64,000 nt of DNA from the IMG/VR virus record IMGVR_UViG_3300025162_000016, positions 124,001 to 188,000 of that record. The stretch is one strand, 5' to 3'. Shown here piece after piece: positions 2-57,047 of this stretch (positions are counted from its first letter, which is position 1; every line of letters begins with the position of its first letter). The translations under genes and the position numbers were made by a program. The notes beneath the pieces were generated by a model, which made no database searches, was not told the DNA's origin, and saw nothing but the letters and a program-made list of their open reading frames with translations.

Positions 2-3000
2 GTAGCCACATCAGTAACCGCTTCATTATTTGGAACCGCAAGTTGGGCATTAAACGCTTTAACAGCGAGTTATGTATCTTCCAGTAACATCGCCGGTAAT
101 GTTACCGCCTTTAGTTCGTCGTGGGCATCGTCAAGTATCTCAGCAAGTTATTTAAATGGATCACACACTGGTTCTACGTTTGGAACCGCATCTTGGGCGA
201 ATAATGCTTTAACCGCATCTTATATTTCTTCGAGTAATATTACCGGAAACATTACCGCATTTAGTTCTTCTTGGGCATCAAGCTCATTGAGTTCATCGTA
301 TCCATGGTTTACTACGGGAAGTAATATTGCGTATGTCGGAGGAAATGTTGGTATTGGGATTGCTACACCGGTAGAAACATTAGCAATATATCAACCTATT
401 GGTTCGAATTCAAGTCTATCATTGGCGGATGGAGATGTTACACATGGAGTAACAACATTAGCAGGAACAAATGTTTGGTTATTAATCAATGAACACACTA
501 CAGATAAAGGCGGAGCACAATTAATTGGATTTTCGGATGCTTCGGATAATCCGGCATTTGAAATAAAAGGAGTTAATACTACAGATCCGGATGTAAACAT
601 ACCGGCAATTGTATTAGATGGATATAGTGCCAATGGAACTGGAGTTAAAGCATTGGCGGCAACTAAAACGGTGGTACAGCTTCAGAACAATGGAGTTGCG
701 CTTTTTAGTCTTTTAGGAAACGGTAATGTTGGCATAGGAATTACTAATCCAATAAACAGTTTGGATGTAGTAGGAAACATTTCTTGCAGCGTAATAACCG
801 CCTCGTTATTTTATGGCACTGCCAGTTGGGCTCTTAATTCTAAAACAGCGAGTTATATTTCTTCCAGTAATATTTTTGGTAGCATTACCGCATTTTCTTC
901 TTCATGGGCTTCCAGTTCATTAATAGCAATAAGTGCAATCTATGCATCCAGTTCAATAACAGCTACGAGTTCGATATTCGCATCTGCGAGTTTATATACC
1001 ACCGGCGCAATTTATGCGTCCAGTTCAATCAGTGCAAGCTGGGCATCTGCTAGTATATCGTCTAGTTATTTATTTGGATCACATACCGGCTCTACATTTG
1101 GAACATCATCTTGGGCTTTTAATTCATTAACTGCTAGTTATATTTCTTCGAGTAATATCACCGGCAATATTACCGCATTTTCTTCTTCATGGGCTTCCAG
1201 TTCATTGAGTTCATCGTATCCATGGTTTACTACGGGAAGTAATATCGCTTATGTCGGCGGAAATGTTGGAATTGGAACAACCAATCCAGCAAATATTATT
1301 GATATTTATCAGAATACAAATTCCAAACCGAAACTTTTGTTTACAAATGCATCAAATGGCACGGGGGCACAGAGTTTAATGGAGTTTGCGAATGATGTGG
1401 GTAATAGAGCGGATTTTGGAATGAATAGTTCCAATAAAACCCAATATGGTAATATTGAACCCGGTTTCGCATTTATGTATACGACTGCCCCTGGTTTCGC
1501 ATTCATGGATGATAGCGCAGGGGGTAAAATAAGTTTTTGGATAGGTTCTAATATATGGAATTCGGCACAATTAACAATAACCGCATCTGGCGTTGGCATT
1601 GGTATCACGACTCCAGTAAATAAATTAGATGTAGCAGGTAATATTTCTTGTTCCATAATCACCGCCTCATTATTCTATGGAACTGCATCGTGGGCACTTA
1701 ATTCTTTAACAGCTAGTTATGTTTCTTCCAGTAATATTATTGGTATAGTAACCGCCTTAAGCGCAAGCTGGGCTAGTGCATCAATCAGTGCTTCATATGC
1801 TCCAGTCCAACCAAATTATTCTTCGAGTGTTTCTGTACAATTTGGGACTAAACAAGACACACTTGTAACTGGAAATACTTATTCTATTACATCATCTTGG
1901 GCTTTTAATTCATTAACTGCTAGTTATATTTCTTCCAGTAATATTATTGGTAATGTAACCGCATTTTCTGCATCATGGGCATCTTCCAGCATTTCTTCTA
2001 GTTATTCCATAACTGCCGGAACGGCGAATGCGATTTCTTTTGTTCCTTTAACATCGACTAGTGCCTCTTGGGTAAGTGCTTCGGTTAAAATAACTACTGC
2101 TGATACTGCATCTTATATTTCTTCCAGTAATATTTTTGGTAATGTAACTGCTCTCTCAGCATCATGGGCTAGTGCATCAATCAGTGCTTCATATGCTCCA
2201 GTCCAACCAAATTATTCTTCGAGTGTTTCTGTACAATTTGGGACTAAACAAGACACACTTGTAACTGGAAATACTTATTCTATTACATCATCTTGGGCTT
2301 TTAATTCATTAACTGCTAGTTATATTTCTTCCAGTAATATTATTGGTAATGTAACCGCATTTTCTGCATCATGGGCATCGGCATCTATTTTTTCGATTAG
2401 TGCATCCTATCTATCGGGAGCAACTGCTATTATAGGAAATGGTGCAACCATTGGAGCAATATCTCTAGGAGTTCCAACTTTTTCATCTACTCAAATAGGA
2501 TATGGATTAACTGGAAATAATGATAATTCAAGAACAGTTCAAGTAGGATATCAAGCCGGTTCGGATACAACCTCCGCAACTGACGCCGTTCAAATCGGGT
2601 TTCAACCGGGACAATTCATATACAATGCAAATAGCTCCGTTCAAGTTGGGGCATATGCTGGCAGATTTGCTACTACTTCATCAAATTCCGTTCATGTTGG
2701 ACGTTCAGCCGGAGAAGGATCAACCAACTCGGAACAATCTGTTAAAGTGGGTGCCTATGCTGGCAAGAGTTCACCTACATCTATTAATGCCGTTCAAATC
2801 GGTTTTCGGGCAGGAGAATTAACTGGAGATTCCACTAACGCCGTTCAGATCGGAGTACTTGCGGGATATTCCGCAACTCACGCAGAAGGAGCAACCCAAG
2901 TCGGTGCTTTTGCAGGACAATATTCTAGCGAAATAAGTTTCTCAACTCAAATAGGATACCGGGCCGGATATGATGCAAAGTTAGCAAATTATACAACGTT

Positions 3001-4570
3001 TATCGGAGCATTCGCAGATGCATTCACTCGTTCATTGTCATTAGATGTTCAAAAAAGCATTGCGATAGGATATGGGGCAAAAGTTTCTGCTTCTAACACC
3101 GCTGTAATCGGAGGAACAATTGGAAGTGGAAACGAAGTTAATGTAACCATTGGCGGCACAACTGCTACAAACAGATTAGATGTAATTGGAAATATTTACT
3201 GTAATGTTATAACTGCCTCGTTCCATTTTGGAACCGCCTCGTGGGCACAATCATCTTCCGTGGCATTAACGGCATCTTATGTTTCTTCCAGTAACATTAT
3301 TGGAACCGTATATTCTCTCAGTTCATCATGGGCATCTGCTAGTTTATATGCAACGGGAGCGATTTATGCTTCCAGTTCAATCAGTGCAAGTTGGGCATCA
3401 AGTTCATTATATTCATTGGGGTCGAATTATGCATCAAGGTCAATATCATCTTCTTGGGCATCTGCCAGTTTATATGCCATTGGAGCAATCTACGCTTCCA
3501 GTTCAATTAGTTCTAGCTGGGCTAGCAGTTCTTTAATAGCAGTAAGTTCAATCTATGCATCCAGTTCAGTAACAGCTACTAGTTCGATATTTGCTTCAGC
3601 TAGTTTATATGCGACGGGAGCAATTTATGCGTCCAGTTCAATCAGTGCAAGTTGGGCATCTGCTAGTATATCGTCTAGTTATTTATTTGGATCACATACC
3701 GGCTCTACATTTGGAACATCATCTTGGGCTTTTAATTCATTAACTGCTAGTTATATTTCTTCGAGTAATATTACCGGAAACATTACCGCATTTAGTTCTT
3801 CATGGGCTTCCAGTTCATTGAGTTCAAGCTATCCTTGGTTTACTACCGGAAGTAATATCGCTTATGTCGGCGGAAATGTTGGTATCGGCATTGTTTCTCC
3901 AGTAAATAAATTAGATGTAGTAGGAAATATTTCTTGTTCAGTAATAACCGCTTCTTTATTTTATGGAACCGCAAGTTTGGCATCATATTCTTTAAGTTCA
4001 TCGGTGGCTACGGTATCGACTGGTCCTTATTATTTATTAATGGCAACGGGATCAACTGGGAATCAGCCATTATATATTGACAATGGGGTTACGTTAAATG
4101 CGGCTACGAATACCTTAACAGTAACGTCATCGAATGCCTTATATGCAATAACTGCTAGTGGAACTACACCGGGATTAAATGCGAGTAATAGAATTACCTG
4201 GACGGCGGGGGAGATGATATTTAGCAGTGGGGTGCCGTATAATCTTGAAGTGGCTCAATTATTGGCAGGGGGATCATGTTTAGTGAAATTGACGATACAG
4301 GGAGACGATGTTAACACGGGGACTCCATATACGTATTATGGAGAATTTATGGTATTGAGAGTTTATTTGGGGGCGAGTCCGCAACCGGGGTATATATTGC
4401 GGCAGATTTCCAGTCCGACCTGGGCGATAACGTCTACGATTATAGATCCCGGTGCTGGTACCCCTAATACATTACAAATATATAATCTCTCGTTCACAGT
4501 AAATCAAACGACAACTGCGAGATATTTAATGGAGAAGTGGTTGTTTGTGGGCAGTGGTTATGGAGTTTAA
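2..4570 (+). CDS. Giant tail-fibre/adhesin-like protein 1 (5'-truncated by the window)
   Basis: The frame of ORF 287..4570 is open from position 2 (VATSVTASLFGTASWALN...), so the TTG at 287 is not the real start. Ser/Ala/Trp-rich TASWA..LTASY repeats, several GNVGIG(T/I) motifs, and a YadA-head-like xxxIGxxAG repeat block at ~2530-3115. Confidence 0.75.
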   Translation, partial: VATSVTASLFGTASWALNALTASYVSSSNIAGNVTAFSSSWASSSISASYLNGSHTGSTFGTASWANNALTASYISSSNITGNITAFSSSWASSSLSSSYPWFTTGSNIAYVGGNVGIGIATPVETLAIYQPIGSNSSLSLADGDVTHGVTTLAGTNVWLLINEHTTDKGGAQLIGFSDASDNPAFEIKGVNTTDPDVNIPAIVLDGYSANGTGVKALAATKTVVQLQNNGVALFSLLGNGNVGIGITNPINSLDVVGNISCSVITASLFYGTASWALNSKTASYISSSNIFGSITAFSSSWASSSLIAISAIYASSSITATSSIFASASLYTTGAIYASSSISASWASASISSSYLFGSHTGSTFGTSSWAFNSLTASYISSSNITGNITAFSSSWASSSLSSSYPWFTTGSNIAYVGGNVGIGTTNPANIIDIYQNTNSKPKLLFTNASNGTGAQSLMEFANDVGNRADFGMNSSNKTQYGNIEPGFAFMYTTAPGFAFMDDSAGGKISFWIGSNIWNSAQLTITASGVGIGITTPVNKLDVAGNISCSIITASLFYGTASWALNSLTASYVSSSNIIGIVTALSASWASASISASYAPVQPNYSSSVSVQFGTKQDTLVTGNTYSITSSWAFNSLTASYISSSNIIGNVTAFSASWASSSISSSYSITAGTANAISFVPLTSTSASWVSASVKITTADTASYISSSNIFGNVTALSASWASASISASYAPVQPNYSSSVSVQFGTKQDTLVTGNTYSITSSWAFNSLTASYISSSNIIGNVTAFSASWASASIFSISASYLSGATAIIGNGATIGAISLGVPTFSSTQIGYGLTGNNDNSRTVQVGYQAGSDTTSATDAVQIGFQPGQFIYNANSSVQVGAYAGRFATTSSNSVHVGRSAGEGSTNSEQSVKVGAYAGKSSPTSINAVQIGFRAGELTGDSTNAVQIGVLAGYSATHAEGATQVGAFAGQYSSEISFSTQIGYRAGYDAKLANYTTFIGAFADAFTRSLSLDVQKSIAIGYGAKVSASNTAVIGGTIGSGNEVNVTIGGTTATNRLDVIGNIYCNVITASFHFGTASWAQSSSVALTASYVSSSNIIGTVYSLSSSWASASLYATGAIYASSSISASWASSSLYSLGSNYASRSISSSWASASLYAIGAIYASSSISSSWASSSLIAVSSIYASSSVTATSSIFASASLYATGAIYASSSISASWASASISSSYLFGSHTGSTFGTSSWAFNSLTASYISSSNITGNITAFSSSWASSSLSSSYPWFTTGSNIAYVGGNVGIGIVSPVNKLDVVGNISCSVITASLFYGTASLASYSLSSSVATVSTGPYYLLMATGSTGNQPLYIDNGVTLNAATNTLTVTSSNALYAITASGTTPGLNASNRITWTAGEMIFSSGVPYNLEVAQLLAGGSCLVKLTIQGDDVNTGTPYTYYGEFMVLRVYLGASPQPGYILRQISSPTWAITSTIIDPGAGTPNTLQIYNLSFTVNQTTTARYLMEKWLFVGSGYGV
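1769..2379 (+). repeat. Exact 215-bp direct duplication inside fibre 1 (1769-1983 = 2165-2379)
   Basis: Base-by-base identity read from the sequence; offset 396 bp (in frame). Confidence 0.9.
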
Positions 4571-4573
4571 AAT

Positions 4574-7500
4574 ATGGCAAATATAACACAAGTAGTTGAA
4601 AACATAGCATATGGAACAGCGTCGTTGTATGGAACAGCCTCCTGGGCTCTTAATTCCAAAACCGCATCCTATATTTCTTCCAGTAATATTATTGGTAATG
4701 TTACCGCCCTCTCTGCTTCTTGGGCGAGTAGCTCTCTAAGCTCATCTTATCCTTGGTTTACTACCGGAAGCAATATCGCTTATGTCGGCGGAAATGTGGG
4801 AATTGGGACTACGAGTCCTGCTCAGAAGCTACATATTGAAAGCTCTACCAGTGCCACCTCTCAATTGCTTATTCGCAATACGGCAATCGCTTTTGGTAGT
4901 GGGTATTCATCTGCCTTATTATTCGCTCCGATTTCATCCTTTGGTGGGACTACGGAAGCGTTATCGGGTGCGAGTATTAAATCGATAACCAGTGATAACT
5001 ATTCCACCGACCTTTTATTTAGTAATTTTGACCAAAATCGTGGAACTTTTGCGGAATCAATGAGGATAACAAGTATCGGCAACGTTGCCATTGGCACTAC
5101 TACTTCGAGCGGACAACAAGTAACAATCAATTCGAATCAAGGAGGAGTAGGAAACGCCGCTCTTAAAATAATTTATAACAATAGTTCGGTTTTAGGTGAA
5201 GTCGCTGTATTAGCTCACCGAACCACGGGATGGAGCAGTTTATATGTTAGCGGCTCTGGAGTTAGTTTGGTCAATGCGGTTTTTGTAGAAGGAGATAAAC
5301 CGGTTATACTCAATGCGGGCAATGTAGGCATCGGGACGACGACTCCGAACAACAAACTGGAAGTGAATGGTAATTTGTATGTGGGAGGTGGGTCTGGTGG
5401 GTCTGGGACAGCGACTCAAAGTGGTTTTCAAGATACCTATGGTGGTATTCGTTCTGCTCTGTTTTTGAGAAATAGTGCAGATTATGCGGCTAGCAGAGGG
5501 ACAGGTATTGATTTTCAAAGTGGAGCAGGAGTCGCCAAAACGAGAATATATTCCCAAGCTCTTGATGCTAATCAAGATGGTTATTATATGGCGTTTGCTA
5601 CAACTCCGACGGGTGGAACTATTGGCGAAAAAATGAGATTGAGTGCAACGGGTGGCTTGTCTTTGGGGACTTATACTGGCACAGACCCAGGGGCAGGGTC
5701 AATGATAATAAGTGGCAACGTCGGAATAGGAACTATTTCTCCGGTAAACAGATTAGATGTAGTAGGAAATATCAGTTGTAGTGTAATCACGGCCAGTTTA
5801 TTCAACGGCATTGCCACTAATATAAGCGGTGGAGTTGCAAATTATATACCAATATGGGCCAGTGGAACTACTCTATCCAGTAGTAATATCTATCAAACCG
5901 GAGGTAATGTCGGAATTGGGACGACGTCACCGGGACAGAAATTATCGGTGGCCGGTGGGACTATGACTTTTTCGGCTGGTGGACTTTCCAATCCCGCTGT
6001 TGGTATTGGAAATACTCAAGCCGCTGCTCAAGCGGAACTGGCAGGTTTCTATACCTACGATAGTTCCAGCGGTTATCAGGGTTGGATTGGTGGTATTGCG
6101 GTAGGAGGAGAAGCGGGAGGTTGGGGAGCAAAAACTTTGAGATTTCAAGTTCCTGATGGTAGTGGAAATCCCGTTAATGCGTTGAACATTTTGGGAGGTA
6201 ACGGATATGTCGGCATCGGGACGACGGCACCGGGGGCAACGTTAGATGTTTCGGCATTTTCCAGCATAAGAGGCCCCGAAATAAGATTGACCGACAGAAC
6301 TGTTATTGCTGCTGCTAGAAACTGGGTCATCGGTAATGCTGTAGGAAATCTTTCATATGGCTCATTTGGTATCTCTTACGGGTCATCTCAAGGAGCTACC
6401 CCCGATGCAAATACGGCGCTTGCGATATTAAATAACGGCAACGTCGGTATCGGGACTACTAGTCCTGCGACAAAACTTCATATTTCTGGAGCAACAGGTG
6501 TCGCTTCTTCAATGTTATTAACTGATACTACGGACAGTGCGGAAATGGTATTCAGACCTGTTTCGGGAGGGGGTTTAATTGCGGTTACTGACCCAAAAGA
6601 TATTTTGTTTGGAACATACTCTACACCTTCAGGTTTGTCGGGCTATACGCAGAACATGGTAATAAAAGGAAGCGGCAACGTCGGCATCGGGACGACGAGT
6701 CCTAGGGCGAAGTTACACGTTAGTACTGGAAGTATTCAATTAGAAGAAAATTATGGTATAAACTGGTTAGTGTCAGGAACTACTCGTCGCATGTTAGCCT
6801 ATGCTGGAAGTAATATTTATTTTGGTAGTATAGACAACGATATTGCTACCAACAATTATTATCGTGCGGGTAGTACTGGCGTGCATATTTTCGAAACCAA
6901 TGGGGGAGAAAAAATGCGTATCACAAATACCGGCAATGTCGGTATTGGTACTGACACTCCCGGTGGAGGATTAGACGTAAGGGTTGTCGGGGCGGGTATT
7001 GCTACTCAAAAAACGGCGGATAGCGTGAGACTTGGTTCTTCTGCTTCCGGACGAAGTTCAATTTGGTTGGATACTTCAAACACCACCTATACGTGGCGAG
7101 CTTGGTTTATAGAAAATTATCTCGGCGATCTCAATATCGGAAGACCAAGCCTAACTGTTATGACTCTTTTAAACGGAGGTAATGTCGGGATTGGGACTAC
7201 TAGTCCACAGGCGTTGACAAGTCTTTCTGGGCTAATTGGCGCACCCGGTATAACAGATAAAGGGATATTACAAATTTATACAGATGCAACTACTCATCCT
7301 GGTAGTGCGGTAAATGTTGGTCTTAGTATTGGAGGCTATTTAGCATATCCGTATGGGATGTGGATTCAATCTATGGATTCAAGGGCTAATCAAAATACCG
7401 CTTACCCAATCATTTTAAATCCACTTGGCGGCAACGTCGGCATCGGGACGACGAGTCCCGGCAGTTCTTTACATGTTTATAGTGCTGGCACGACGGCTTT

Positions 7501-10500
7501 CATTCAAGTTGATACTATCGCTGCTAATACTTCACAATTTAGACTACTTAAAGATAATGTTCTTAAATGGGCAATATATTCTCCCGCTGGTTCAAATGAT
7601 TTAAGATTTTATGATGCTGCGGATAGAGTTACAATTCAAAGTGGCGGCAATGTTGGTATCGGCACTACTACACCCGAAGCATTATTAACGTTGTCCAAAG
7701 ATGCGGATATTGCCATCCGATTTAACACGACATCCGCCGTCACAGTTGCACGTAATTGGGCAATAGATGCATCAAGACTCGCTTATGGTGATTTAGCGGT
7801 AATGCAATCAACCGCTCTCGGAGGTGATCCCCTAGCAGCAGGAACTGCTAGAATGTATTTTGATTATTCAGGCTATGTCGGTATCGGGACGACGAGTCCG
7901 GAATCTTTGTTACATATATCCGGAGGAGCAGTAGATATATCTCCCGGCGCAAATGGTAATTATAATGAAGGCATACGTATTCATCCTGCTAATAATGATT
8001 ATTCAACTATTGTAATAGGTGCGGTTTCTGGAGCAAATGGATCTGGAACCGGACAATGGAATTTTTTAAGATATCCGGCGGCAAATGGCAATATGTTTTC
8101 TATCCTACATAATGCCGCAAATGTTATGACTATGACGACAGGTAGTAATATCGGCATCGGGACGACGACACCAGTCGCTAAACTTGATGTAAACGGTACA
8201 ATTAATTCCGGAACTGGTCATATATATTTATCTAGGAACCTTACTGATTTATCGGCTCGTCGAAACTGGGGATTTGTAACTGAACAAGACACTGTTGGTG
8301 ATTTTAGTATTAGGGAAAGCACTTCTAATGTTAATGACCCCGCTTCTTCTAGGTTGACTATTTTAAGCGGCGGCAACGTCGGCATCGGGACGACGAGTCC
8401 AGGAGCGAAGTTGGAAGTTAATGGAAGCATTAATGCTAAAACTGCTGGTAGCAATATCATTTCTTCTACAGTATCAGGCACTGGTGTATATGCATCGGTT
8501 CAAACTGCCGCAGATACCGCTGGATTATACCAATGTACATTCGGTTCGACTTACGGCGGAACTCTATATGGCGGAGTTACGGGAAACAATCAAGTTGTCA
8601 GTGAAGTTCAAGGGGCAAGTAGTTATTATTTTGGAACGGTTGGTACTGCTCCGATTTATTTCGCTCCACAAAGAAGTATTGCAATGACAATATTAAATAA
8701 TGGCAACGTCGGCATAGGAACTATTTCTCCGGTAAACAGATTAGATGTAGTAGGAAATATCAGTTGTAGTGTAATCACGGCCAGTTTATTTTTTGGTACT
8801 GCATCAAGAGCAACCAATGCATTGACAGCGGCATATGTATCAAATACTGGAGTAGTAATAGATACTACCGGAATGAATGTTAATAATGCTACCACCTATG
8901 GGGTTACTGGTATTAATTTCAGTTCCGGAATAACTTATGTATCCAGTAGTGGAATTATCTTTACTTCCGGTAATAGTTACAAAGATGGCGCTGCTACCGC
9001 TTCTTTATTCGGTACGGCCAGTTGGGCACTTAATGCCAAAACCGCCAGTTATATCTCCTCTACCAATATCTCCGGTAATGTCACTGCCTTTAGTGCAAGT
9101 TGGGCCAGTTCTTCTTTAAGCTCATCCTACCCCTGGCTTACCACCGCCGACAATATTTCTTATGTCGGCGGTAACGTCGGTATCGGGGTATCTGCTTTCG
9201 GAAGTACTGCGGAAAAATTATTGGTCTCCGGAACAACTTATAACGTAATCAGTGGCGTAGGAACTCTAGATAATTATTTACAATTAAATATTAAAAATAG
9301 TAGCGCCGGTGTCGCCGCCAGTTCAGATATAGTAGCAACTAATAATACCGGCAATGAAACCGGTAATTTCGTAGACTTAGGTATTAATAGCAGCGGTTAT
9401 ACTTCCAATGTCGTCGGATTACAAAATGATGGCTATTTGTATAATACCGGTAGTAATTTCTATATCGGTAATATAACCACTGGTAAAAATCTCTACCTGT
9501 TCGCAGGTGGAACCGCCGATACCGCCTCCGTAATAATAAATTCTTCTAAAAATGTCGGCATCGGTACAATTTCCCCAGTAAATAAATTAGATGTATTCGG
9601 TAATATATCATGTAGTATAATCACCGCTTCTTTATTTTATGGTACCGCTTCCAGAGCAACTACTGCTACCACCGCATTATCAAGTTCCACTGGGGTGTCT
9701 TCTGATAGTACAGATTATAATTTAACAATGGTGGCCGGAAGTGGTAATCAACCATTACTAGCAGATACACATCCAAGTTTAGTATGGAATCCAGGAACAA
9801 CCGGAGTCGGTCTATTAAAAGTAGGTGGATTATTAAATCTTAGAGATCCTAATTCGACGACGGTTTTATATAGAGATACATATATAGAAGATGCGGGCGG
9901 TGCAATACGATTTACAACAAGCGGATCAACTTATACCACATTCGGGGTTACTGGAAATATCACTATTCCCGTAACCGCCAAATTAGTCGGAACATCCAGT
10001 TGGGCAGTAAGTGCCTCCTGGGCTCCCTCTGTAGCTGCTAGTTTATATGTCACCGGCGCAATCTATGCCTCCAGTTCTATTAGTGCATCATGGGCATCAT
10101 CGAGTTTATATTCTATTGGGGCAATCTATGCCTCCAGTTCTATTAGTGCATCATGGGCATCATCGAGTTTATATTCTATTGGGGCAATCTATGCCTCCAG
10201 TTCTATTAGTGCATCATGGGCATCATCGAGTTTATATTCTATTGGGGCAATCTATGCCTCCAGTTCTATTAGTGCATCATGGGCATCATCGAGTTTATAT
10301 TCTATTGGGGCAATCTATGCCTCCAGTTCTATTAGTGCATCATGGGCCAGTGCATCTATAAGCTCATCCTACCCTTGGCGTGCCATTGGAACAGATGTTT
10401 CTTATATGGGCGGTAATGTAGGAATTGGTACAACTACCCCAATAGGAGCAGATTCAACAAACCGAACCTTCCAAATCGGCGATCGGTTTGTAATTCAAAG

Positions 10501-11452
10501 TACTGTCGGCAATCAAACTACTATTGCAAATAATGCGTATTATGACGGAGGTTGGAAAAAAATAGTTACCGGAGCTTCAACCGCAGTTCGGTTAAATGGA
10601 CTGGGTACCGCCGGAGATATTACTTTTACCACCAGTGCGAGTGCGGCAGGTGGAACTGCAATGAATAATTGGGATAGCACTGATATTAAAATGACCATTC
10701 TAAATGGCGGTAATGTCGGTATCGGACTTGCCAATCCAGGAGCAAAATTGCAAGTAGCTGGTAATATTAGACTACCAAATGCCGGTGGATATCTTGAATG
10801 GCTGGATGCGGGCGGCGGAGCTAATATTGGATTTTATGCTTCTGTCAATGATTTAGCATTTTATACAGCGGGAACTAATCGCATGCAAATTGATACTGCC
10901 GGTGGAGTGTCAATTGGAAATGATACATATGTAACCACAACCCCACCATCTAATGGACTAATAATCAGTGGTGCCGTTGGTATTGGTTCACTCGCCCCGG
11001 TAAATAAATTAGATGTAGTTGGTAATATATCATGTAGTGTAATCACCGCTTCTTTATTTTATGGAACCGCTTCCCGAGCAGTTAGTTCATCCTTTGCTAT
11101 AACGGCATCCTATGCCTCAAATGCCGCTTCATCAACTCCGTCAAATGTATATACATTAGTTAATAATTCCGCACAAACACAATCAGTAAATTTTACTATG
11201 CCTTATATTGCAGTAACTGCCGGTGCTGGAAATTTATATTTTATTACCTCTTCAAATAGAACCGCCGTTAGCTCAACCGTAATATACGTCTCTGCCTCTT
11301 ATTCAAGATTGTTACGCTGGAATGAAGACTGGCAATACTTAACTCAACCCCATCCCAATAGCCTAGCCGCCGATGAATCATTAATAGCAAGCTTTACTTG
11401 CTTCGGTACCAATGAAACCGATGTAATAGTAGCAATCGCCGTAACAGTATAA
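4574..11452 (+). CDS. Giant modular tail-fibre-like protein 2 (2292 aa, ~20 GNVGIGT-delimited modules)
   Basis: About 20 G(N/Y)VGIGT motifs separating variable segments (72-110 aa each in the central 5903-8702 run), plus SSSWAS repeats shared with fibre 1; lies upstream of the tail genes. Confidence 0.75.
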   Translation: MANITQVVENIAYGTASLYGTASWALNSKTASYISSSNIIGNVTALSASWASSSLSSSYPWFTTGSNIAYVGGNVGIGTTSPAQKLHIESSTSATSQLLIRNTAIAFGSGYSSALLFAPISSFGGTTEALSGASIKSITSDNYSTDLLFSNFDQNRGTFAESMRITSIGNVAIGTTTSSGQQVTINSNQGGVGNAALKIIYNNSSVLGEVAVLAHRTTGWSSLYVSGSGVSLVNAVFVEGDKPVILNAGNVGIGTTTPNNKLEVNGNLYVGGGSGGSGTATQSGFQDTYGGIRSALFLRNSADYAASRGTGIDFQSGAGVAKTRIYSQALDANQDGYYMAFATTPTGGTIGEKMRLSATGGLSLGTYTGTDPGAGSMIISGNVGIGTISPVNRLDVVGNISCSVITASLFNGIATNISGGVANYIPIWASGTTLSSSNIYQTGGNVGIGTTSPGQKLSVAGGTMTFSAGGLSNPAVGIGNTQAAAQAELAGFYTYDSSSGYQGWIGGIAVGGEAGGWGAKTLRFQVPDGSGNPVNALNILGGNGYVGIGTTAPGATLDVSAFSSIRGPEIRLTDRTVIAAARNWVIGNAVGNLSYGSFGISYGSSQGATPDANTALAILNNGNVGIGTTSPATKLHISGATGVASSMLLTDTTDSAEMVFRPVSGGGLIAVTDPKDILFGTYSTPSGLSGYTQNMVIKGSGNVGIGTTSPRAKLHVSTGSIQLEENYGINWLVSGTTRRMLAYAGSNIYFGSIDNDIATNNYYRAGSTGVHIFETNGGEKMRITNTGNVGIGTDTPGGGLDVRVVGAGIATQKTADSVRLGSSASGRSSIWLDTSNTTYTWRAWFIENYLGDLNIGRPSLTVMTLLNGGNVGIGTTSPQALTSLSGLIGAPGITDKGILQIYTDATTHPGSAVNVGLSIGGYLAYPYGMWIQSMDSRANQNTAYPIILNPLGGNVGIGTTSPGSSLHVYSAGTTAFIQVDTIAANTSQFRLLKDNVLKWAIYSPAGSNDLRFYDAADRVTIQSGGNVGIGTTTPEALLTLSKDADIAIRFNTTSAVTVARNWAIDASRLAYGDLAVMQSTALGGDPLAAGTARMYFDYSGYVGIGTTSPESLLHISGGAVDISPGANGNYNEGIRIHPANNDYSTIVIGAVSGANGSGTGQWNFLRYPAANGNMFSILHNAANVMTMTTGSNIGIGTTTPVAKLDVNGTINSGTGHIYLSRNLTDLSARRNWGFVTEQDTVGDFSIRESTSNVNDPASSRLTILSGGNVGIGTTSPGAKLEVNGSINAKTAGSNIISSTVSGTGVYASVQTAADTAGLYQCTFGSTYGGTLYGGVTGNNQVVSEVQGASSYYFGTVGTAPIYFAPQRSIAMTILNNGNVGIGTISPVNRLDVVGNISCSVITASLFFGTASRATNALTAAYVSNTGVVIDTTGMNVNNATTYGVTGINFSSGITYVSSSGIIFTSGNSYKDGAATASLFGTASWALNAKTASYISSTNISGNVTAFSASWASSSLSSSYPWLTTADNISYVGGNVGIGVSAFGSTAEKLLVSGTTYNVISGVGTLDNYLQLNIKNSSAGVAASSDIVATNNTGNETGNFVDLGINSSGYTSNVVGLQNDGYLYNTGSNFYIGNITTGKNLYLFAGGTADTASVIINSSKNVGIGTISPVNKLDVFGNISCSIITASLFYGTASRATTATTALSSSTGVSSDSTDYNLTMVAGSGNQPLLADTHPSLVWNPGTTGVGLLKVGGLLNLRDPNSTTVLYRDTYIEDAGGAIRFTTSGSTYTTFGVTGNITIPVTAKLVGTSSWAVSASWAPSVAASLYVTGAIYASSSISASWASSSLYSIGAIYASSSISASWASSSLYSIGAIYASSSISASWASSSLYSIGAIYASSSISASWASSSLYSIGAIYASSSISASWASASISSSYPWRAIGTDVSYMGGNVGIGTTTPIGADSTNRTFQIGDRFVIQSTVGNQTTIANNAYYDGGWKKIVTGASTAVRLNGLGTAGDITFTTSASAAGGTAMNNWDSTDIKMTILNGGNVGIGLANPGAKLQVAGNIRLPNAGGYLEWLDAGGGANIGFYASVNDLAFYTAGTNRMQIDTAGGVSIGNDTYVTTTPPSNGLIISGAVGIGSLAPVNKLDVVGNISCSVITASLFYGTASRAVSSSFAITASYASNAASSTPSNVYTLVNNSAQTQSVNFTMPYIAVTAGAGNLYFITSSNRTAVSSTVIYVSASYSRLLRWNEDWQYLTQPHPNSLAADESLIASFTCFGTNETDVIVAIAVTV
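10058..10347 (+). repeat. 63-bp perfect tandem repeat (4 copies + 38 nt) encoding AIYASSSISASWASSSLYSIG
   Basis: Units start at 10058, 10121, 10184, 10247 and 10310 (partial); identical at DNA level. Confidence 0.95.
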
Positions 11453-11464
11453 AAATAAAATAAT

Positions 11465-12238
11465 ATGTTTGGATCATTATCAGATGCCGCCTTCGTAGGA
11501 GAAAATGTATACAGTGGAAGTGTATTAGCTATCGATTTTAATTATGGAGTAAATCCGCCGGCAGTACAAAGAACTTTAAATGCTAATATTGTATCTAATA
11601 CAGTTGATATTAGCAACGTTCATTGGAGAAGATTATATGCTACTAGATGTCCCAATCTTATATATCTGTTTGCGGTATCGTGCAATCTAAGTTATATAAG
11701 CATATTAAATTGCCCAAATATCGATTATCTCTATTGCGATATTAATAATTTAACGTCATTGGATTTAAGTTATTCAAAAATTACTACGCTCTCTGTTTTA
11801 CTTTGCCACCACAATCAATTACAAGTATTAACATTAGGTAGTTGTTTAGTACAAGATCAATTGGAATGTCATAATAATCAACTCACTTCATTGGATTTAC
11901 ATACTCAAACCTCATTAATATATTTAAATTGCAGTACTAATCCACTGGCATCATTAAACGTGCATACGGCTTCGGCGTTAACAAATTTAAATGTACGTGA
12001 TTGTTCTGCATTGAGAATCTTGGATGCGTATGGAACAGCACTAGATCAAAATATGATCGATATCGTATATGGAGATCTACTTTATAATGCAATAACTTAT
12101 AATTTACGTGGTAATGGAAATGTAGATTTAAGAGTAGCCAATGCCAGTGTAACTCCATCCGCAACCGGTATAGGATATAGAAATACTCTAACAAGTACCT
12201 CATATTTATGGACTTGTATAGACAATGACAATTTTTGA
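11465..12238 (+). CDS. Leucine-rich-repeat protein (internalin/BspA-like LRRs)
   Basis: Repeats of the LxxLxCxxNxLxxLDL type (YLYCDINNLTSLDLS, LECHNNQLTSLDLH, YLNCSTNPLASLNV). Confidence 0.75.
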   Translation: MFGSLSDAAFVGENVYSGSVLAIDFNYGVNPPAVQRTLNANIVSNTVDISNVHWRRLYATRCPNLIYLFAVSCNLSYISILNCPNIDYLYCDINNLTSLDLSYSKITTLSVLLCHHNQLQVLTLGSCLVQDQLECHNNQLTSLDLHTQTSLIYLNCSTNPLASLNVHTASALTNLNVRDCSALRILDAYGTALDQNMIDIVYGDLLYNAITYNLRGNGNVDLRVANASVTPSATGIGYRNTLTSTSYLWTCIDNDNF

Positions 12239-45464: not shown

Positions 45465-45503
45465 TCGGGAGTCTATCTATATGGTAGACTCCCGATTTCA
45501 TTT
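45465..45503 (+). terminator. Stem-loop/terminator after SSB gene
   Basis: TCGGGAGTCTATC-loop-GGTAGACTCCCGA followed by TTTCATTT. Confidence 0.7.
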
Positions 45504-45513
45504 AATTTATATT

Positions 45514-47118
45514 ATGGCAAAAACGAAATCAACTCACGTAGAACAAGATGAAACCGCAAGTCGAGATAAGTTGGCTACTTTTCTTCAAAAGGCTCTTAAT
45601 GGCCGACAAAAGGATGGTCAAAAAGTAGCTTATTTTTTGGATGAGAAAGAAGACCCCTCCAATGTAATTGATTGGGTATCAACTGGATGCACCATGTTAG
45701 ATTTGGCTATTTGTAATAGACCAAATGCCGGTCTTCCTGCCGGGAGAATTTCTGAATTCAATGGGCTCGAATCCTGTGTCACCGAAGATACCGAAATTGC
45801 AGTAAGAATTGGCGATGATGTAAAAATCTTAAATAAGTTTAAAATTGGTGACGTAAAACCCTTGATGGAACAAGGAATCCCTGTGGCGGTTTTAACTGTA
45901 AAAGAGGAATTTGTTAAAATCACAAAATATGTAGAAAAGGGATTACTTGATACATTTGAAGTATTTACTGAATACGGAAATAGTATTAAAGTAAGCCGTG
46001 AACACCGGTTTTTTACTAATGACGGTTGGGTGGAATGTAAAGATTTGATTCCAGGAAGACACTCTATTTTTTATCGTGAAGATGGATATACAAACGCATT
46101 ATCTTTTTGGAAAGTTACAGAAATATTTCCGATAGGAAAACATAACATTGTTGATATTACGGTCGATCATCCCGATCATTGTTATTTTGGTAATGGAATG
46201 TTAAATCATAATTCCGGGAAATCTTTACTATGTGCTCACATTATTGCAGAGACGCAGAAAAAAGGTGGATTTGCAGTTATGCTTGATCCGGAATACGCTG
46301 CGGCTCCTGATTTTTGGACCGCATTGGGCGTTTCTGTGAAAGATCTTCTTTATGTACCTTGTTCCTATTTGGAAGAGATGCTTGGGCATTTGGAAGCTAT
46401 TATCGGAGAGACTAGAAAAGAAAATCCCGATCGATTAGTTACCATTATTACGGATTCAATCGCCTCGGTTCCTACAAAGAAAGAACTTGAAGCTGATTAT
46501 GATGCCGCTGGGTATGGAACCGATAAATCTAAACTGCTTTCTTTAGCAATGAGAAAACTTAATGGACTTATTGCTCGACAACGGATTTGTGCGGTATTCA
46601 CAAATCAACTTCGACAAAATCTTAAAGCAGTATCATTTGGTGACCCCTATCTGGAACCGGGAGGTATGGCATTTCGGTATGCGGCAAGTGTGCGAGTTAG
46701 AACTAAAAATGTTGGTCGAGTATCTACTAAAGAAAAAGAAGTAATTGGTAGAACTATTCAAACTCAAGTGACAAAGACTCGATTCGGCCCGTCTTTCCGA
46801 ACAGCGTCTTTTGATATCCACTATGATAGCGGTATTCAAAATCTCGCAAGTTGGTTGGATTACATGAAAGATCATGGATTGATTACCGGCACAAAAGCGG
46901 GATATACATTTAAAATGTGTGATAATCAAATTCTTAATGCGAATGAATTTGTTCGTGTCGCCAATGAACAGCCCGAATTCAAAGAAAAAGTTTATAAATC
47001 CATTTGTGATAATTATATCATGGTATATCGTCCCGCAAACTCCAAAATAGATGAATCGGTAGAGCATTTAGAAGGAGATGGCAAAGATGAAGAAAAAGTA
47101 AAAGAGACTGTCGAATAA
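45514..47118 (+). CDS. recA: RecA/UvsX recombinase containing a mini-intein (start revised to ATG 45514)
   Basis: STGCTMLDLAI, GLPAGRISEF, P-loop GLES|SGKS split by the intein, DSIAS, FTNQLR, PGGMAFRYAASVR. Confidence 0.9.
   Translation: MAKTKSTHVEQDETASRDKLATFLQKALNGRQKDGQKVAYFLDEKEDPSNVIDWVSTGCTMLDLAICNRPNAGLPAGRISEFNGLESCVTEDTEIAVRIGDDVKILNKFKIGDVKPLMEQGIPVAVLTVKEEFVKITKYVEKGLLDTFEVFTEYGNSIKVSREHRFFTNDGWVECKDLIPGRHSIFYREDGYTNALSFWKVTEIFPIGKHNIVDITVDHPDHCYFGNGMLNHNSGKSLLCAHIIAETQKKGGFAVMLDPEYAAAPDFWTALGVSVKDLLYVPCSYLEEMLGHLEAIIGETRKENPDRLVTIITDSIASVPTKKELEADYDAAGYGTDKSKLLSLAMRKLNGLIARQRICAVFTNQLRQNLKAVSFGDPYLEPGGMAFRYAASVRVRTKNVGRVSTKEKEVIGRTIQTQVTKTRFGPSFRTASFDIHYDSGIQNLASWLDYMKDHGLITGTKAGYTFKMCDNQILNANEFVRVANEQPEFKEKVYKSICDNYIMVYRPANSKIDESVEHLEGDGKDEEKVKETVE
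45775..46212 (+). mobile_element. Mini-intein (146 aa) in the RecA Walker A loop
   Basis: Starts CVTEDT, ends VDITVDHPDHCYFGNGMLNHN, +1 residue Ser; no endonuclease motifs. Confidence 0.9.
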
Positions 47119-56450: not shown

Positions 56451-57047
56451 ATGATTAAATTGTCTAAATGGGCAAAACAATACGGTGTAACATATAAAAC
56501 TGCTTGGAAATGGTTCAAAGAAGGGAATTTTCCTGCCAAAACAAAACAGTTATCAACCGGAACTATATTAGTTTATGATGATGAAAATATCAAAGAGAAG
56601 GAAATTAAAACCGTAATTTATTGTAGAGTTTCAAATCACTCCAGAAAAGCAGAATTGGAATACCAAGTTCAACGATGTGAAGAGTTCTGTGTTAAAAACG
56701 GTTGGCAAATATCAAAAATATATAGAGAGATTGCCTCTGGTATGAATGATAAAAGAAAACAATTGTGGACAATGATTGATAGCAATCCAACCAGAATTGT
56801 TGTAGAGAATAAAGATAGATTGACTCGTTTTGGATTTAATTATATCGAGCAATTATCAAAGAAATTAGGAACAGAAATTATAGTAATTCATATGGATAAA
56901 GAAGATGATAAGGATTTGATAAAAGACTTGGTATCCATAATTTATTCTTTCTGTGCCAGATTGTACGGAATGAGAAAGGCGTATAATAAAACCAAGAAAA
57001 TCAAAGAAATTATAAATATGACCGATCAATTGGAAATTGTAAAATGA
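56451..57047 (+). CDS. tnpA: IS607 transposase (MerR-like HTH + serine recombinase)
   Basis: MIKLSKWAKQYGVTYKTAWKW, YCRVS, EIASG, VVENKDRLTRFGF, DLVSIIYSFCARLYG. Confidence 0.93.
   Translation: MIKLSKWAKQYGVTYKTAWKWFKEGNFPAKTKQLSTGTILVYDDENIKEKEIKTVIYCRVSNHSRKAELEYQVQRCEEFCVKNGWQISKIYREIASGMNDKRKQLWTMIDSNPTRIVVENKDRLTRFGFNYIEQLSKKLGTEIIVIHMDKEDDKDLIKDLVSIIYSFCARLYGMRKAYNKTKKIKEIINMTDQLEIVK

What the first reader, a model, noticed from the sequence alone, without database searches (positions are those of the whole stretch)
5318..8790. Tail-fibre modules joined by DNA-identical GC-rich linkers: possible recombinational cassette shuffling
Seen: variable 72-110 aa modules are separated by GNVGIGTTSP. 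The 29-mer GGCAACGTCGGCATCGGGACGACGAGTCC is identical at 6674, 7430 and 8372, and the core ATCGGGACGAC recurs near 5330, 6215, 7883 and 8156, despite free synonymous positions and an AT-rich genome. A longer block (GNVGIGTISPVNRLDVVGNISCSVITASLF) is nearly DNA-identical at ~5714 and ~8702. The modules between linkers are unrelated to each other. Inference: linkers serve as homologous crossover or gene-conversion points letting the phage RecA/UvsX add, delete or swap receptor-binding modules. All linkers are direct repeats and no invertase is present, so this is not a classic shufflon.
Basis: partly seen in the sequence, partly recalled or inferred. Interest (0 to 1): 0.65.

Follow-up and report, generated by a model that had tools for sequence, protein, structure and literature searches.

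The report
Fibre modules joined by shared DNA linkers
A giant tail-fibre gene of a 369-kb freshwater phage is a chain of variable beta-helix modules joined by one conserved motif whose DNA, not just its protein, is near-identical here and in hundreds of fibre genes of other phages, tiny symbiotic bacteria and archaea, and comparisons suggest modules have been swapped at these joints.

Summary
ORF2 (4574-11452, 2292 aa) is a tail fibre built like the solved Bdellovibrio 'mosaic adhesive trimer' (MAT) fibres. Each module is one beta-helix unit, and GNVGIGTTSP is the unit's boundary motif. The modules therefore share one architecture, and at least three share a subfamily, though most cores are too diverged to align.

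The linker DNA is unusual. Linker GC3 is 0.59 against 0.28 in module interiors and the genome. Glycine codon choice is position-specific. The same 29-mer occurs in at least 119 viral and 120 prokaryotic contigs with locus GC from 0.29 to 0.66. It sits in more than 100 unrelated flank contexts, while three other synonymous versions occur in 0-7 viral contigs.

Single modules here are 55-74% identical to modules in unrelated proteins, with identity falling to about 20% or less at the linkers. In other phages, 40% of shared-patch ends lie at linkers, against 9% expected.

So linkers as evolutionary crossover or gene-conversion joints is supported. Ongoing shuffling in this phage's population is not shown: the independent assemblies that span the array give the same module order, and the available reads cannot bridge the linkers. 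The closest precedent is recombination at conserved motifs in T-even fibre genes.

The parts
4574..11452 (+). ORF2 (P0001, 2292 aa): giant tail-fibre protein with 22 GNVGIG-type boundary motifs plus SNIGIG at 8144. It lies directly upstream of an LRR protein and the tail sheath gene.
   Evidence: ORF list. PHROG tail-fibre families phrog_9942 (E 9.8e-41) and phrog_18345 (E 7.5e-32). Sheath at 12878-16534. No Pfam hit.
5318..8790 (+).
   Evidence: Linker GC3 is 0.586 against 0.28 in module interiors.
6672..6702 (+). Canonical linker copy 1: 31 nt identical to copies 2 and 3. It encodes (S)GNVGIGTTSP.
7428..7458 (+). Canonical linker copy 2, 756 nt downstream of copy 1 and in frame.
8370..8400 (+). 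Canonical linker copy 3, 942 nt downstream of copy 2 and in frame. Its downstream 20-40 nt (PGAKLEVNG) is also 86-96% identical to CPR and other prokaryotic loci.
5318..5346 (+). Near-canonical linker with 3 mismatches. Others of this kind start at 6437 and 7871. More diverged linkers start at 5903, 6203, 6932, 7178, 7646 and 8144.
5713..5802 (+). Left copy of a 90-nt direct repeat (1 mismatch) encoding GNVGIGTISPVNRLDVVGNISCSVITASLF. With the right copy it brackets a 2988-nt in-frame block that holds most of the module array.
   Evidence: The other six or seven copies of this junction motif in ORF1 and ORF2 are only 62-73% identical in DNA (families D6 and D8).
8701..8790 (+). Right copy of the 90-nt direct repeat. 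It is followed by the usual FGTAS... continuation, so it looks like the original junction.
5903..6232 (+). Module m444 with both of its linkers. The core is 72-74% identical in protein, and 73% in DNA, to one module of P0073 on a bacterial contig (L141). Flanking modules are about 20% identical.
8144..8400 (+). Module m1191 with both linkers. The core is 70% identical to one module of a Candidatus Roizmanbacteria protein (P0015, L142). Identity collapses at both linkers.
2..4570 (+). 3' part of ORF1, a second giant fibre gene that starts at genome position 120009. It has the same boundary motif 4 times, but in AT-rich codons such as GGAAATGTTGGTATTGG.
45481..47118 (+). RecA/UvsX-like recombinase, the candidate enzyme for homologous exchange. 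It carries a sub-threshold intein-like insert.
   Evidence: phrog_97 E 1.2e-52. Pfam RecA E 6.9e-40 and a weak, sub-threshold Intein_splicing hit.

Best explanation
ORF2 is a MAT-type tail fibre, probably a homotrimer, made of tandem beta-helix units. GNVGIGTTSPxxKLxV is the structural boundary (capping-loop) motif that starts every unit, which explains its conservation in protein.

In addition, the motif's DNA belongs to a 'canonical' 24-31-nt GC-rich haplotype, GGC AAC GTC GGC ATC GGG ACG ACG AGT CC. This haplotype is shared by fibre genes of many phages, CPR bacteria, DPANN archaea and predatory bacteria, whatever the genome's base composition.

The most likely cause is recurrent homologous recombination and short-tract gene conversion at these codon-aligned direct repeats. 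Because all linkers sit in the same frame and the same structural register, any linker-to-linker exchange gives an in-frame, foldable fibre with whole units added, lost or replaced. Exchange also keeps the linker DNA homogeneous, while unit interiors drift to the local codon usage.

Shown here:
- the fibre's fold family;
- the anomaly in linker DNA;
- mosaic modules bounded by linkers;
- enrichment of patch ends at linkers in other phages.

Inferred:
- that DNA identity drives the exchange, rather than merely marking where exchange is tolerated;
- that the phage's RecA/UvsX-like enzyme or host enzymes do the exchange;
- that GC-richness reflects biased conversion or selection for stable pairing.

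There is no evidence that this is a programmed switch or that it is active in the sampled population.
For: Fold:
- A profile of the m1191 module family hits Bdellovibrio fibre Bd2133 (8OND) at E 5.6e-28, and four other MAT fibre chains.
- The Bd2133 chain carries the same ...MRIDTSGNLGLGT / ...ISQAGNVGIGATAPTAKLEV motifs.
- The top Foldseek hits for the module model are all MAT fibres.
- The paper places beta-helix domain borders at G683 and N814 and describes conserved capping loops (PMC10769870).

DNA anomaly in the window:
- Linker GC3 is 0.586, against 0.28 in module interiors and 0.27 in the genome. Linkers use this genome's rare codons GGC, GTC, ATC, GGG and ACG.
- Synonymous identity is z = 4.9 above the null and confined to the 10 linker codons. 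Three identical haplotypes have P = 0.0002.

DNA anomaly across the family:
- Three other synonymous 29-mers occur in 2, 0 and 7 viral contigs.
- Among 123 occurrences in the viral loci and this window, there are more than 100 flank clusters on each side. Locus GC ranges from 0.29 to 0.66.
- Two CPR-type bacterial genes that were picked by protein similarity alone have linker GC3 of 0.73, against 0.23 and 0.36 in their interiors.

Copying rather than codon preference:
- Glycine codons are position-specific: G1 is GGC, G4 is GGC or GGT, G6 is GGG. The test gives p = 0.0026 in the window array, 1.7e-8 in viral loci and 2.3e-15 in the CPR genes.
- Mismatches to the canonical version are bimodal, with peaks at 0-2 and at 5-6.
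- Locus L006 has a private haplotype in 7 of 8 linkers, although its module cores are at most 34% identical.

Exchange at linkers:
- m444, m1191 and m1267 are 55-74% identical to single modules of P0073, P0015 and P0049. The drop at the linkers is sharp for m444 and m1191 (flanks about 20% or less). For m1267 the high identity covers the C-terminal 75 aa and ends at the 3' linker.
- In P0073 the m444-like unit is followed by an m953-like unit, so the order differs.
- 198 of 500 internal ends of DNA patches at 88% identity or more lie within 12 nt of a linker, against 46 +/- 6 expected.
- 13 of 25 locus pairs that share one flank of the 29-mer do not share the other flank.

In the gene itself:
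- A 90-nt repeat with one mismatch brackets a 2988-nt in-frame block.
Against: - No structural variant of this gene was seen. L004 (another sample) is 100% identical over 3649-10180. P0002, from a 252-kb contig, differs only by one 63-nt tandem unit.
- Short-read contigs break at every long repeat, including the three exact linkers, so they are uninformative. Contig depths show no consistent drop across modules.
- In the best module match (m444 against P0073), the linkers are no more conserved at synonymous sites than the core: 0.50-0.57 against 0.57. That exchange is therefore old.
- Breakpoints at linkers would also arise if recombination were random and only domain-boundary recombinants folded.
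- Metagenome assemblers can make chimeras at shared repeats, which would inflate the patch-end statistic.
- Cores next to canonical linkers show no foreign codon usage. This test is weak, because likely donors are also AT-rich with GC-rich linkers.
- Why this particular GC-rich haplotype is the canonical one remains unexplained.
Confidence: 0.6

Rival explanations
1. Codon-level selection without recombination. The invariant, structurally critical motif is encoded by particular codons for translational accuracy or for a pause at each domain boundary that helps co-translational folding. Linker DNA would then converge independently in each gene.
For: Most linker codons (GGC, AAC, GTC, ATC) are C-ending NNY codons, and all the favoured ones are rare in this genome. 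Linker GC3 exceeds interior GC3 in 7 of 8 distant viral relatives and in both CPR genes. The excess is confined to the motif itself.
Against: - The same codons are used in loci from 29% to 66% GC, where they cannot all be rare or all be optimal.
- Glycine codons differ by position within the motif (GGC, GGC/GGT, GGG), which a codon-general preference does not predict.
- The haplotypes are linked, and the mismatch distribution is bimodal.
- ORF1 of the same phage encodes the same motif with ordinary AT-rich codons.
- L006 has a different, private, homogenised version.
- There is no RNA hairpin signal.
Confidence: 0.15
2. Relic of recent tandem duplication or a single recent acquisition. The array arose by recent duplication of one module, or was imported from a GC-richer donor, and the linkers simply have not yet diverged.
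For: The array is tandem. The 2988-nt block is bracketed by a 90-nt repeat with one mismatch, which suggests one recent insertion or duplication event. Overall GC in 4001-8000 is 0.44, against 0.39-0.40 nearby.
Against: - Most module cores are not alignable with each other in protein. The window's 16 cores fall into 15 BLAST clusters, so any duplication is ancient, yet three linkers are identical.
- Synonymous identity does not extend even 8 codons beyond the motif.
- Interior GC3 equals the genome's, so the cores carry no donor codon bias.
- The higher overall GC comes from glycine- and alanine-rich composition plus the linkers.
Confidence: 0.05
3. Breakpoints at linkers reflect selection on protein folding only. 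Recombination, homologous or illegitimate, occurs anywhere, and only products joined at unit boundaries give a functional trimeric fibre. The canonical DNA spreads merely by hitch-hiking with frequently transferred modules.
For: The linker is the structural unit boundary in solved MAT fibres, so boundary-joined chimeras are the ones expected to fold. Old exchanges show no extra linker conservation.
Against: This does not explain why linker DNA is homogenised within a gene whose cores are long diverged. It also does not explain why canonical linkers persist against strong AT pressure in genes whose interiors are at GC3 0.23-0.36. Hitch-hiking predicts extended identity into the adjacent core, which is absent in more than 100 contexts.
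Confidence: 0.15
4. Programmed site-specific switching. The 29-31-nt linkers are sites for a dedicated recombinase that deletes or exchanges modules at high frequency.
For: The genome encodes three small serine recombinases. The identical sites are about the size of a recombinase crossover site.
Against: - All 23 linker motifs found in the genome are direct repeats in two ORFs, with no inverted or silent cassettes.
- The recombinase in the window is an IS607-like TnpA paired with a TnpB, 45 kb away.
- There is no tyrosine recombinase.
- No variants appear in the independent assemblies.
- The same linker occurs in hundreds of unrelated genomes.
Confidence: 0.03

Closest known systems
Mosaic adhesive trimer (MAT) fibres of Bdellovibrio bacteriovorus (Caulton et al. 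2024, PMC10769870; PDB 8OND, 8OJN, 8OML, 8OL4, 8ON4)
   Same: The repeated unit is the same: an intertwined beta-helix or beta-prism segment that starts with a GN[VL]G[IL]G...P..KL.V boundary or capping motif. The proteins are long fibres with variable parts. Many homologues end in a Peptidase_S74 chaperone.
   Different: This one is a phage virion fibre of 2292 aa with about 20 units. No S74 domain was detected, and its ends are different (SSSNI..SWAS repeats). The paper describes mosaicism of protein domains, mainly the tips. In the passages returned by term searches for 'recombin', 'mosaic' and 'capping loop' it does not discuss nucleotide-level conservation of the motif or recombination at it; the full text was not read.
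Recombination at conserved motifs in T-even long-tail-fibre and adhesin genes (gp37 His boxes, gp38 glycine-rich motifs; Tetart et al. 1996, 1998, as cited in Trojet et al. 2011, PMC3157838)
   Same: Short conserved, glycine-rich motifs separate hypervariable segments. [quoted passage not shown] The logic is the same: conserved joints plus interchangeable segments.
   Different: The protein family and fold are unrelated. In gp38 the segments are loops of one small domain, not whole beta-helix units. The T-even exchanges were shown experimentally among close relatives. Here a single 29-nt haplotype is shared across phages, bacteria and archaea and runs against local codon bias, which to my knowledge has not been reported for the T-even motifs.
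Shufflons and invertase-driven fibre switching (R64 Rci shufflon; Mu Gin, P1 Cin)
   Same: Alternative fibre or adhesin ends are produced by recombination at short repeats.
   Different: Those systems need inverted repeats, silent cassettes and an adjacent site-specific recombinase. Here all repeats are direct and lie within one ORF, and no dedicated recombinase is adjacent.
Diversity-generating retroelements (DGRs)
   Same: They diversify phage fibre proteins. One is present in this very fibre cluster, just upstream of the window.
   Different: A DGR rewrites one variable repeat from a template repeat through a reverse transcriptase, with adenine-specific changes. The linkers are not template/variable repeat pairs and show no adenine-specific pattern.

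Membership tests
MAT-type trimeric beta-helix fibre superfamily | Repeated beta-helix or beta-prism units that are homologous to the solved MAT fibre units | tested here: met
   Module-family profile A1 against the PDB: 8OND E 5.6e-28, 8OJN E 1.3e-13, 8OML E 3.1e-10. The top Foldseek hits are all MAT fibres, with TM-score (query-normalised) 0.50-0.52 for a monomer model of pLDDT 74.
MAT-type trimeric beta-helix fibre superfamily | Conserved boundary or capping-loop motif at the edges of each unit | tested here: met
   The motif GN[VL]G[IL]G..P..KL.V aligns between P0001 and the Bd2133 crystal chain. The paper's published consensus is V-G-G/N-pi-x-x-P-x-x-x-L; the register differs by one residue from the motif here.
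MAT-type trimeric beta-helix fibre superfamily | Homotrimeric, intertwined assembly | not tested
   Only a monomer model was made. The trimer is inferred from homology to the crystal structures.
MAT-type trimeric beta-helix fibre superfamily | C-terminal S74 chaperone-protease (S74 subgroup), or an alternative adhesive tip (NS74 subgroup) | tested here: not met
   P0001 has no Peptidase_S74 or any other Pfam domain at E <= 0.01. Many homologues do carry PF13884. It could belong to the NS74 type; the C-terminal about 140 aa are uncharacterised.
MAT-type trimeric beta-helix fibre superfamily | Signal peptide followed by a conserved N-terminal beta-rich domain of about 130 aa (Bdellovibrio members) | not tested
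   This was not compared. The N-terminus here carries the phage's own GTASWALNS / SSSNI..SWAS repeats, so this feature is probably absent.
Conserved-motif-mediated fibre recombination (T-even gp37/gp38 type) | Conserved short motifs flanking variable segments | tested here: met
Conserved-motif-mediated fibre recombination (T-even gp37/gp38 type) | Recombination breakpoints fall in or next to the motifs | tested here: met
   This rests on comparison only: module-limited identity with breaks at linkers, and 198 of 500 patch ends at linkers against 46 expected. The caveats are assembly chimeras and selection for foldable products.
Conserved-motif-mediated fibre recombination (T-even gp37/gp38 type) | Recombinants observed in crosses or in populations | tested here: inconclusive
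   The public runs are held only as short-read contigs that break at every long repeat, including the three exact linkers. The assemblies that span the array give one module order.
Conserved-motif-mediated fibre recombination (T-even gp37/gp38 type) | Homology to gp37 or gp38 | tested here: not met
   No Pfam hit of any kind, so none to gp37 or gp38 families. The PHROG hits are generic tail-fibre families, and the fold is MAT-like.
Shufflon or invertase switch | Inverted repeats and silent cassettes | tested here: not met
   All 23 linker motifs found in the 369-kb genome are on the + strand inside ORF1 and ORF2. The 29-mer has 0 reverse matches.
Shufflon or invertase switch | Adjacent site-specific recombinase | tested here: not met
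   No tyrosine recombinase was found. The three serine recombinases are distant, and the one in the window is IS607-like with a TnpB.
Diversity-generating retroelement acting on the linkers | Template and variable repeat pair with adenine-specific differences, plus a reverse transcriptase | tested here: not met
   A DGR exists at genome 113638-118215, but its template repeat matches only two variable repeats in two 460-aa genes. Differences between linkers are not adenine-specific.

The most novel reading that the evidence does not exclude
The canonical 24-31-nt GC-rich linker is a shared recombination 'adaptor'. It would be a common DNA currency that lets phages, CPR bacteria, DPANN archaea and predatory bacteria, all of which live by attaching to other cells, trade beta-helix adhesin units across domains of life by short-homology recombination. 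It would be kept identical against local mutation bias because lineages whose linkers decay drop out of the exchange pool. On this reading the linker is conserved for evolvability, not for coding.
Probability: 0.3. Interest if true: 0.8.

Novelty: new variant of a known kind. Interest (0 to 1): 0.62.

Why it matters
Tail fibres and surface fibres decide which cells a phage, a predator or an episymbiont can attach to. How they diversify so fast is a long-standing question.

If a short, DNA-identical joint really mediates exchange of whole structural units, it gives a concrete and testable rule for natural fibre shuffling. It would explain the extreme mosaicism of a very large and almost unstudied protein family: 3934 of the 8000 scored giant-protein candidates matched the array. 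It would also show synonymous sites being held constant for recombination rather than for translation.

It links phage fibres to the cell-surface fibres of CPR bacteria and Bdellovibrio at the DNA level, which bears on gene flow between these groups. It also has a practical consequence: these linkers break short-read assemblies, so fibre genes of this family are probably often fragmented or mis-joined in metagenomes.

Tried and rejected
- Near-identity search of the phage collection with ORF2: no match.
- Pfam on ORF1 and ORF2: no family.
- Full-text search for the motif (GNVGIGT and variants): no paper.
- Read evidence. Only Logan contigs from two studies were available. They break at 4672-4699, 5755-5773, 6675-6701, 7430-7456, 8375-8398, 8743-8761 and 10087. 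The listed 'joints' have sides of 22-36 nt and come from other organisms that share the linker; depth in the linker bins is up to 4-6 times the phage's. They say nothing for or against variants.
- Relatives found through the tail sheath (at most 71% aa identity) do not carry this fibre upstream of the sheath. Module order could therefore not be compared between close relatives.
- Metagenome scan for modules m1100-m1267: it returned only the source contig.
- Test of whether modules next to canonical linkers look foreign by GC3: they do not (0.16-0.30). The test is uninformative, because likely donors have the same AT-rich cores.
- RNA hairpin in the linker: the minimum free energy of -7.8 is ordinary (41% of shuffles are as low or lower).
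- Tests of whether all cores are homologous. By BLAST, 1674 cores fall into 1005 clusters. Profile-to-profile links are patchy, with probabilities of 98, 97, 88, 80 and 75% for some pairs and below 15% for most. A common origin of all cores is plausible from the shared architecture but was not shown by sequence.
- Shufflon, invertase and DGR explanations were considered and rejected.

Full report
**Setting**

The window is G000:C1:124001-188000 of a 368,758-bp IMG/VR phage record with direct terminal repeats. Its GC content is 35.8%. The source contig is Ga0209083_1000006, and the runs that hold the sequence are freshwater and lake metagenomes.

ORF2 (4574-11452, 2292 aa, P0001) follows a second giant fibre ORF. 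That ORF, ORF1, starts at genome position 120009 and ends at window 4570. ORF2 precedes an LRR protein and the tail sheath gene at 12878-16534. PHROGs place ORF2 in tail-fibre families. Pfam finds nothing.

**Check of the observation**

- The 29-mer is exact at 6674, 7430 and 8372. It occurs with 3 mismatches at 5318, 6437 and 7871.
- The longer block is a 90-nt direct repeat with one mismatch (5713-5802 and 8701-8790). The copies are 2988 nt apart and in frame.
- The span 5318-8790 holds 14 boundary motifs. ORF2 holds 22, plus SNIGIG at 8144. A genome-wide scan puts all 23 linker motifs it found in the two fibre ORFs, on the + strand.

The DNA identity is more than the protein motif requires.
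- Linker GC3 is 0.586. Module interiors have 0.28 and long ORFs across the genome have 0.27.
- The favoured linker codons (GGC, GTC, ATC, GGG, ACG) are among the rarest synonymous codons in this genome.
- Same-codon identity between linkers is 0.465, against 0.335 expected (z = 4.9).
- Three identical haplotypes occur in 0.02% of column shuffles.
- The 8 codons on either side of the motif show no excess.
- ORF1 encodes the same motif with ordinary AT-rich codons.

It fails, because the interiors carry the phage's codon usage.

**What the modules are**

A profile of the family that contains m1025 and m1191 (alignment A1) matches the crystal chains of Bdellovibrio bacteriovorus fibres. Bd2133 (8OND) scores E 5.6e-28, and four other chains also match. 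The Bd2133 chain shows the same ...MRIDTSGNLGLGT... and ...ISQAGNVGIGATAPTAKLEV... motifs. An AlphaFold model of one unit has pLDDT 74, and its best Foldseek matches are only these fibres.

Caulton et al. 2024 (PMC10769870) describe these as 'mosaic adhesive trimer' fibres. They are intertwined trimeric beta-helices whose units are edged by conserved capping loops. The paper places domain borders at G683 and N814, that is, at this motif.

So each 'module' is one beta-helix unit of a fibre shaft, and the linker is the unit boundary.

The cores are extremely diverse. Among 1674 cores from 120 homologues there are 1005 BLAST clusters. The A1 profile nevertheless spans the full length of m169, m544, m787, m1025, m1191 and m1947. 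Beyond the two linkers, the core clearly adds score only for m544, m1025 and m1191. An RNW...YGD core motif is visible in m544, m787, m1025 and m1191. Profile-to-profile links between the other core families are patchy.

'Unrelated' is therefore too strong, although most cores cannot be aligned with each other.

**The linker DNA across the family**

The exact 29-mer occurs in at least 119 IMG/VR contigs, including giant-virus bins. It also occurs in at least 120 contigs of prokaryote genomes. The prokaryote hits include:
- many CPR lineages (Saccharibacteria, Paceibacterota, Doudnabacteria, Kaiserbacteria and others);
- DPANN archaea;
- Bdellovibrionales;
- Planctomycetes, Gammaproteobacteria and Flavobacteriales.

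Three other synonymous versions of the same peptide occur in 2, 0 and 7 viral contigs.

The 123 occurrences with full flanks, from the viral loci and this window, fall into more than 100 flank clusters on each side. Locus GC ranges from 0.29 to 0.66 in the viral loci and from 0.32 to 0.61 in the prokaryotic loci.

Two bacterial genes were chosen only because single modules resemble modules of ORF2. They are L141, whose neighbours are TsaE and POR genes, and L142 from Candidatus Roizmanbacteria, whose neighbours are ComEC, SecE and NusG. Both have canonical linkers almost throughout. Linker GC3 is 0.73, against 0.23 and 0.36 in their interiors.

Three features point to copying rather than codon preference.
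- Glycine codons are position-specific (GGC, then GGC or GGT, then GGG) in the window, in viral loci and in the CPR genes.
- Mismatches of other GNVGIGTTSP linkers to the canonical version are bimodal, with peaks at 0-2 and at 5-6.
- Locus L006 carries its own 20-nt haplotype in 7 of 8 linkers, while its cores are at most 34% identical.

The sequence has no unusual RNA fold.

**Evidence for exchange at linkers**

With the linkers removed, single modules of ORF2 find much closer relatives than the protein as a whole does. The whole-array match to other proteins is about 27-32%. The best single-module matches are:

| Module | Best match | Identity |
|---|---|---|
| m444 | P0073 | 74% over 88 aa |
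| m1191 | P0015 | 70% over 63 aa |
| m1267 | P0049 | 55% over 75 aa |
| m1025 | P0121 | 50% over 62 aa |

For m444 and m1191, alignments through the neighbouring modules show identity falling to about 20% or less exactly at the linkers on both sides. For m1267 the similarity covers the C-terminal part of the module and ends at its 3' linker. In P0073 the m444-like unit is followed by an m953-like unit, which is a different order from ORF2.

Among 138 other viral loci, 198 of 500 internal ends of DNA patches (at least 88% identical, 150-3000 nt long) lie within 12 nt of a linker. The expectation is 46 +/- 6. Several patches of 540-570 nt at 96-100% identity are bounded by linkers on both sides in both loci. 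Thirteen of 25 locus pairs that share one flank of the 29-mer do not share the other flank.

In ORF2 itself, the 90-nt near-perfect repeat brackets a 2988-nt in-frame block. Only the right copy continues with the usual FGTAS sequence. This looks like a block insertion, or a conversion, through that junction motif.

Because all linkers are codon-aligned direct repeats at the same structural point, any linker-to-linker exchange is in frame and in register. This last point is inference.

**Limits**

No variant of this gene was seen.
- L004, from another sample, is 100% identical over 3649-10180.
- P0002, from a 252-kb contig, differs only by one unit of the perfect 63-nt tandem repeat at 10058-10347.
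- The five runs that hold the sequence are available only as k-mer contigs that break at every long repeat, including the three exact linkers. Their 'joints' come from other organisms that share the linker. Contig depths show no consistent dip.
- No close relative with a comparable array was found.

Breakpoints at linkers could also reflect selection for foldable chimeras. Some linker-bounded patches in metagenome contigs could be assembly chimeras. The best module match is old: it is 73% identical in DNA, and its linkers are no better conserved than its core.

**Other mechanisms**

- There are no inverted copies of the linker.
- No tyrosine recombinase was found.
- The serine recombinase in the window is an IS607-like TnpA with a TnpB next to it.
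- A genuine DGR sits about 6 kb upstream of the window, but it targets two other genes.
- A RecA/UvsX-like recombinase is encoded at 45481-47118.

**Verdict**

The inference that linkers are crossover or gene-conversion joints is supported as an evolutionary mechanism. It turns out to be a property of a very large fibre family rather than of this phage alone. Active shuffling in this population remains untested.

Conceptually the closest precedent is recombination at conserved motifs in T-even fibre and adhesin genes (PMC3157838). Structurally the protein belongs with the MAT fibres.

I found no description of the cross-domain, DNA-identical, GC-rich linker in the searchable literature. In the passages of the MAT paper that my term searches returned, recombination is mentioned only in the methods.

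Noticed in passing
outside the window: genome G000:C1:113638-118215 (about 6-10 kb upstream of window position 1): A complete diversity-generating retroelement sits inside the fibre gene cluster. The reverse transcriptase ORF is at 117217-118215 (RVT_1, E 2.7e-19). The template repeat is at 116922-117026. Two variable repeats lie at the 3' ends of paralogous 465- and 459-aa genes (114914-115015 and 116375-116479). Their differences from the template are almost all at adenines (A>G 7 and 10).
   Followed up: partly
window 10058-10347: A perfect 63-nt tandem repeat with 4.6 copies encodes 21-aa units (SLYSIGAIYASSSISASWASS) in ORF2. The same protein from another assembly (P0002, 252-kb contig) has exactly one unit fewer. 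This is either copy-number variation or assembly collapse.
   Followed up: partly
window 56451-58345: An IS607-like pair: a 198-aa serine recombinase (Resolvase domain at residues 55-179) overlaps a 433-aa TnpB-like ORF (Cas12f1-like TNB domain). Two more such recombinases lie at genome positions 11242 and 76313.
   Followed up: partly
window 45481-47118: The RecA/UvsX-like recombinase is long (545 aa). It has a sub-threshold Intein_splicing hit (26 bits against a 35.8-bit cut-off) at residues 136-190, ahead of the main RecA match, so it may contain an intein.
   Followed up: no
window 16702-18519 and 28842-30842: Two large ORFs (605 and 666 aa) of the HNH/homing-endonuclease type (phrog_3339, E 1e-122 and 1e-130) lie among the structural genes.
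   Followed up: no
window 891-1190 / 3504-3803 and 1717-1998 / 2113-2394: ORF1 holds long direct repeats of 300 nt (91% identical) and 282 nt (93% identical). The SSSNI..SWAS repeat family recurs 12 times across ORF1 and ORF2. These fibre genes are therefore full of substrates for unequal recombination beyond the linkers.
   Followed up: no
loci L141 and L142 (bacterial contigs); window 5903-6232 and 8144-8400: Two modules of this phage fibre are 70-74% identical to modules of giant surface proteins on bacterial contigs. One is on a Candidatus Roizmanbacteria contig, next to ComEC, SecE and NusG genes. The other is on an unnamed 136-kb contig, next to TsaE and POR genes. This could reflect gene flow between phage and CPR bacteria, or hint at the host.
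   Followed up: partly
window 4672-10087 (contig ends) and L004, L143: Public assemblies of this phage break at the long repeats of the fibre genes, including the three exact linkers. Fibre genes of this family are therefore likely to be fragmented or mis-joined in short-read metagenomes.
   Followed up: partly
window 11465-12238: A 257-aa leucine-rich-repeat protein (LRR_4, E 2.2e-8) lies between the fibre gene and the tail sheath gene.
   Followed up: no
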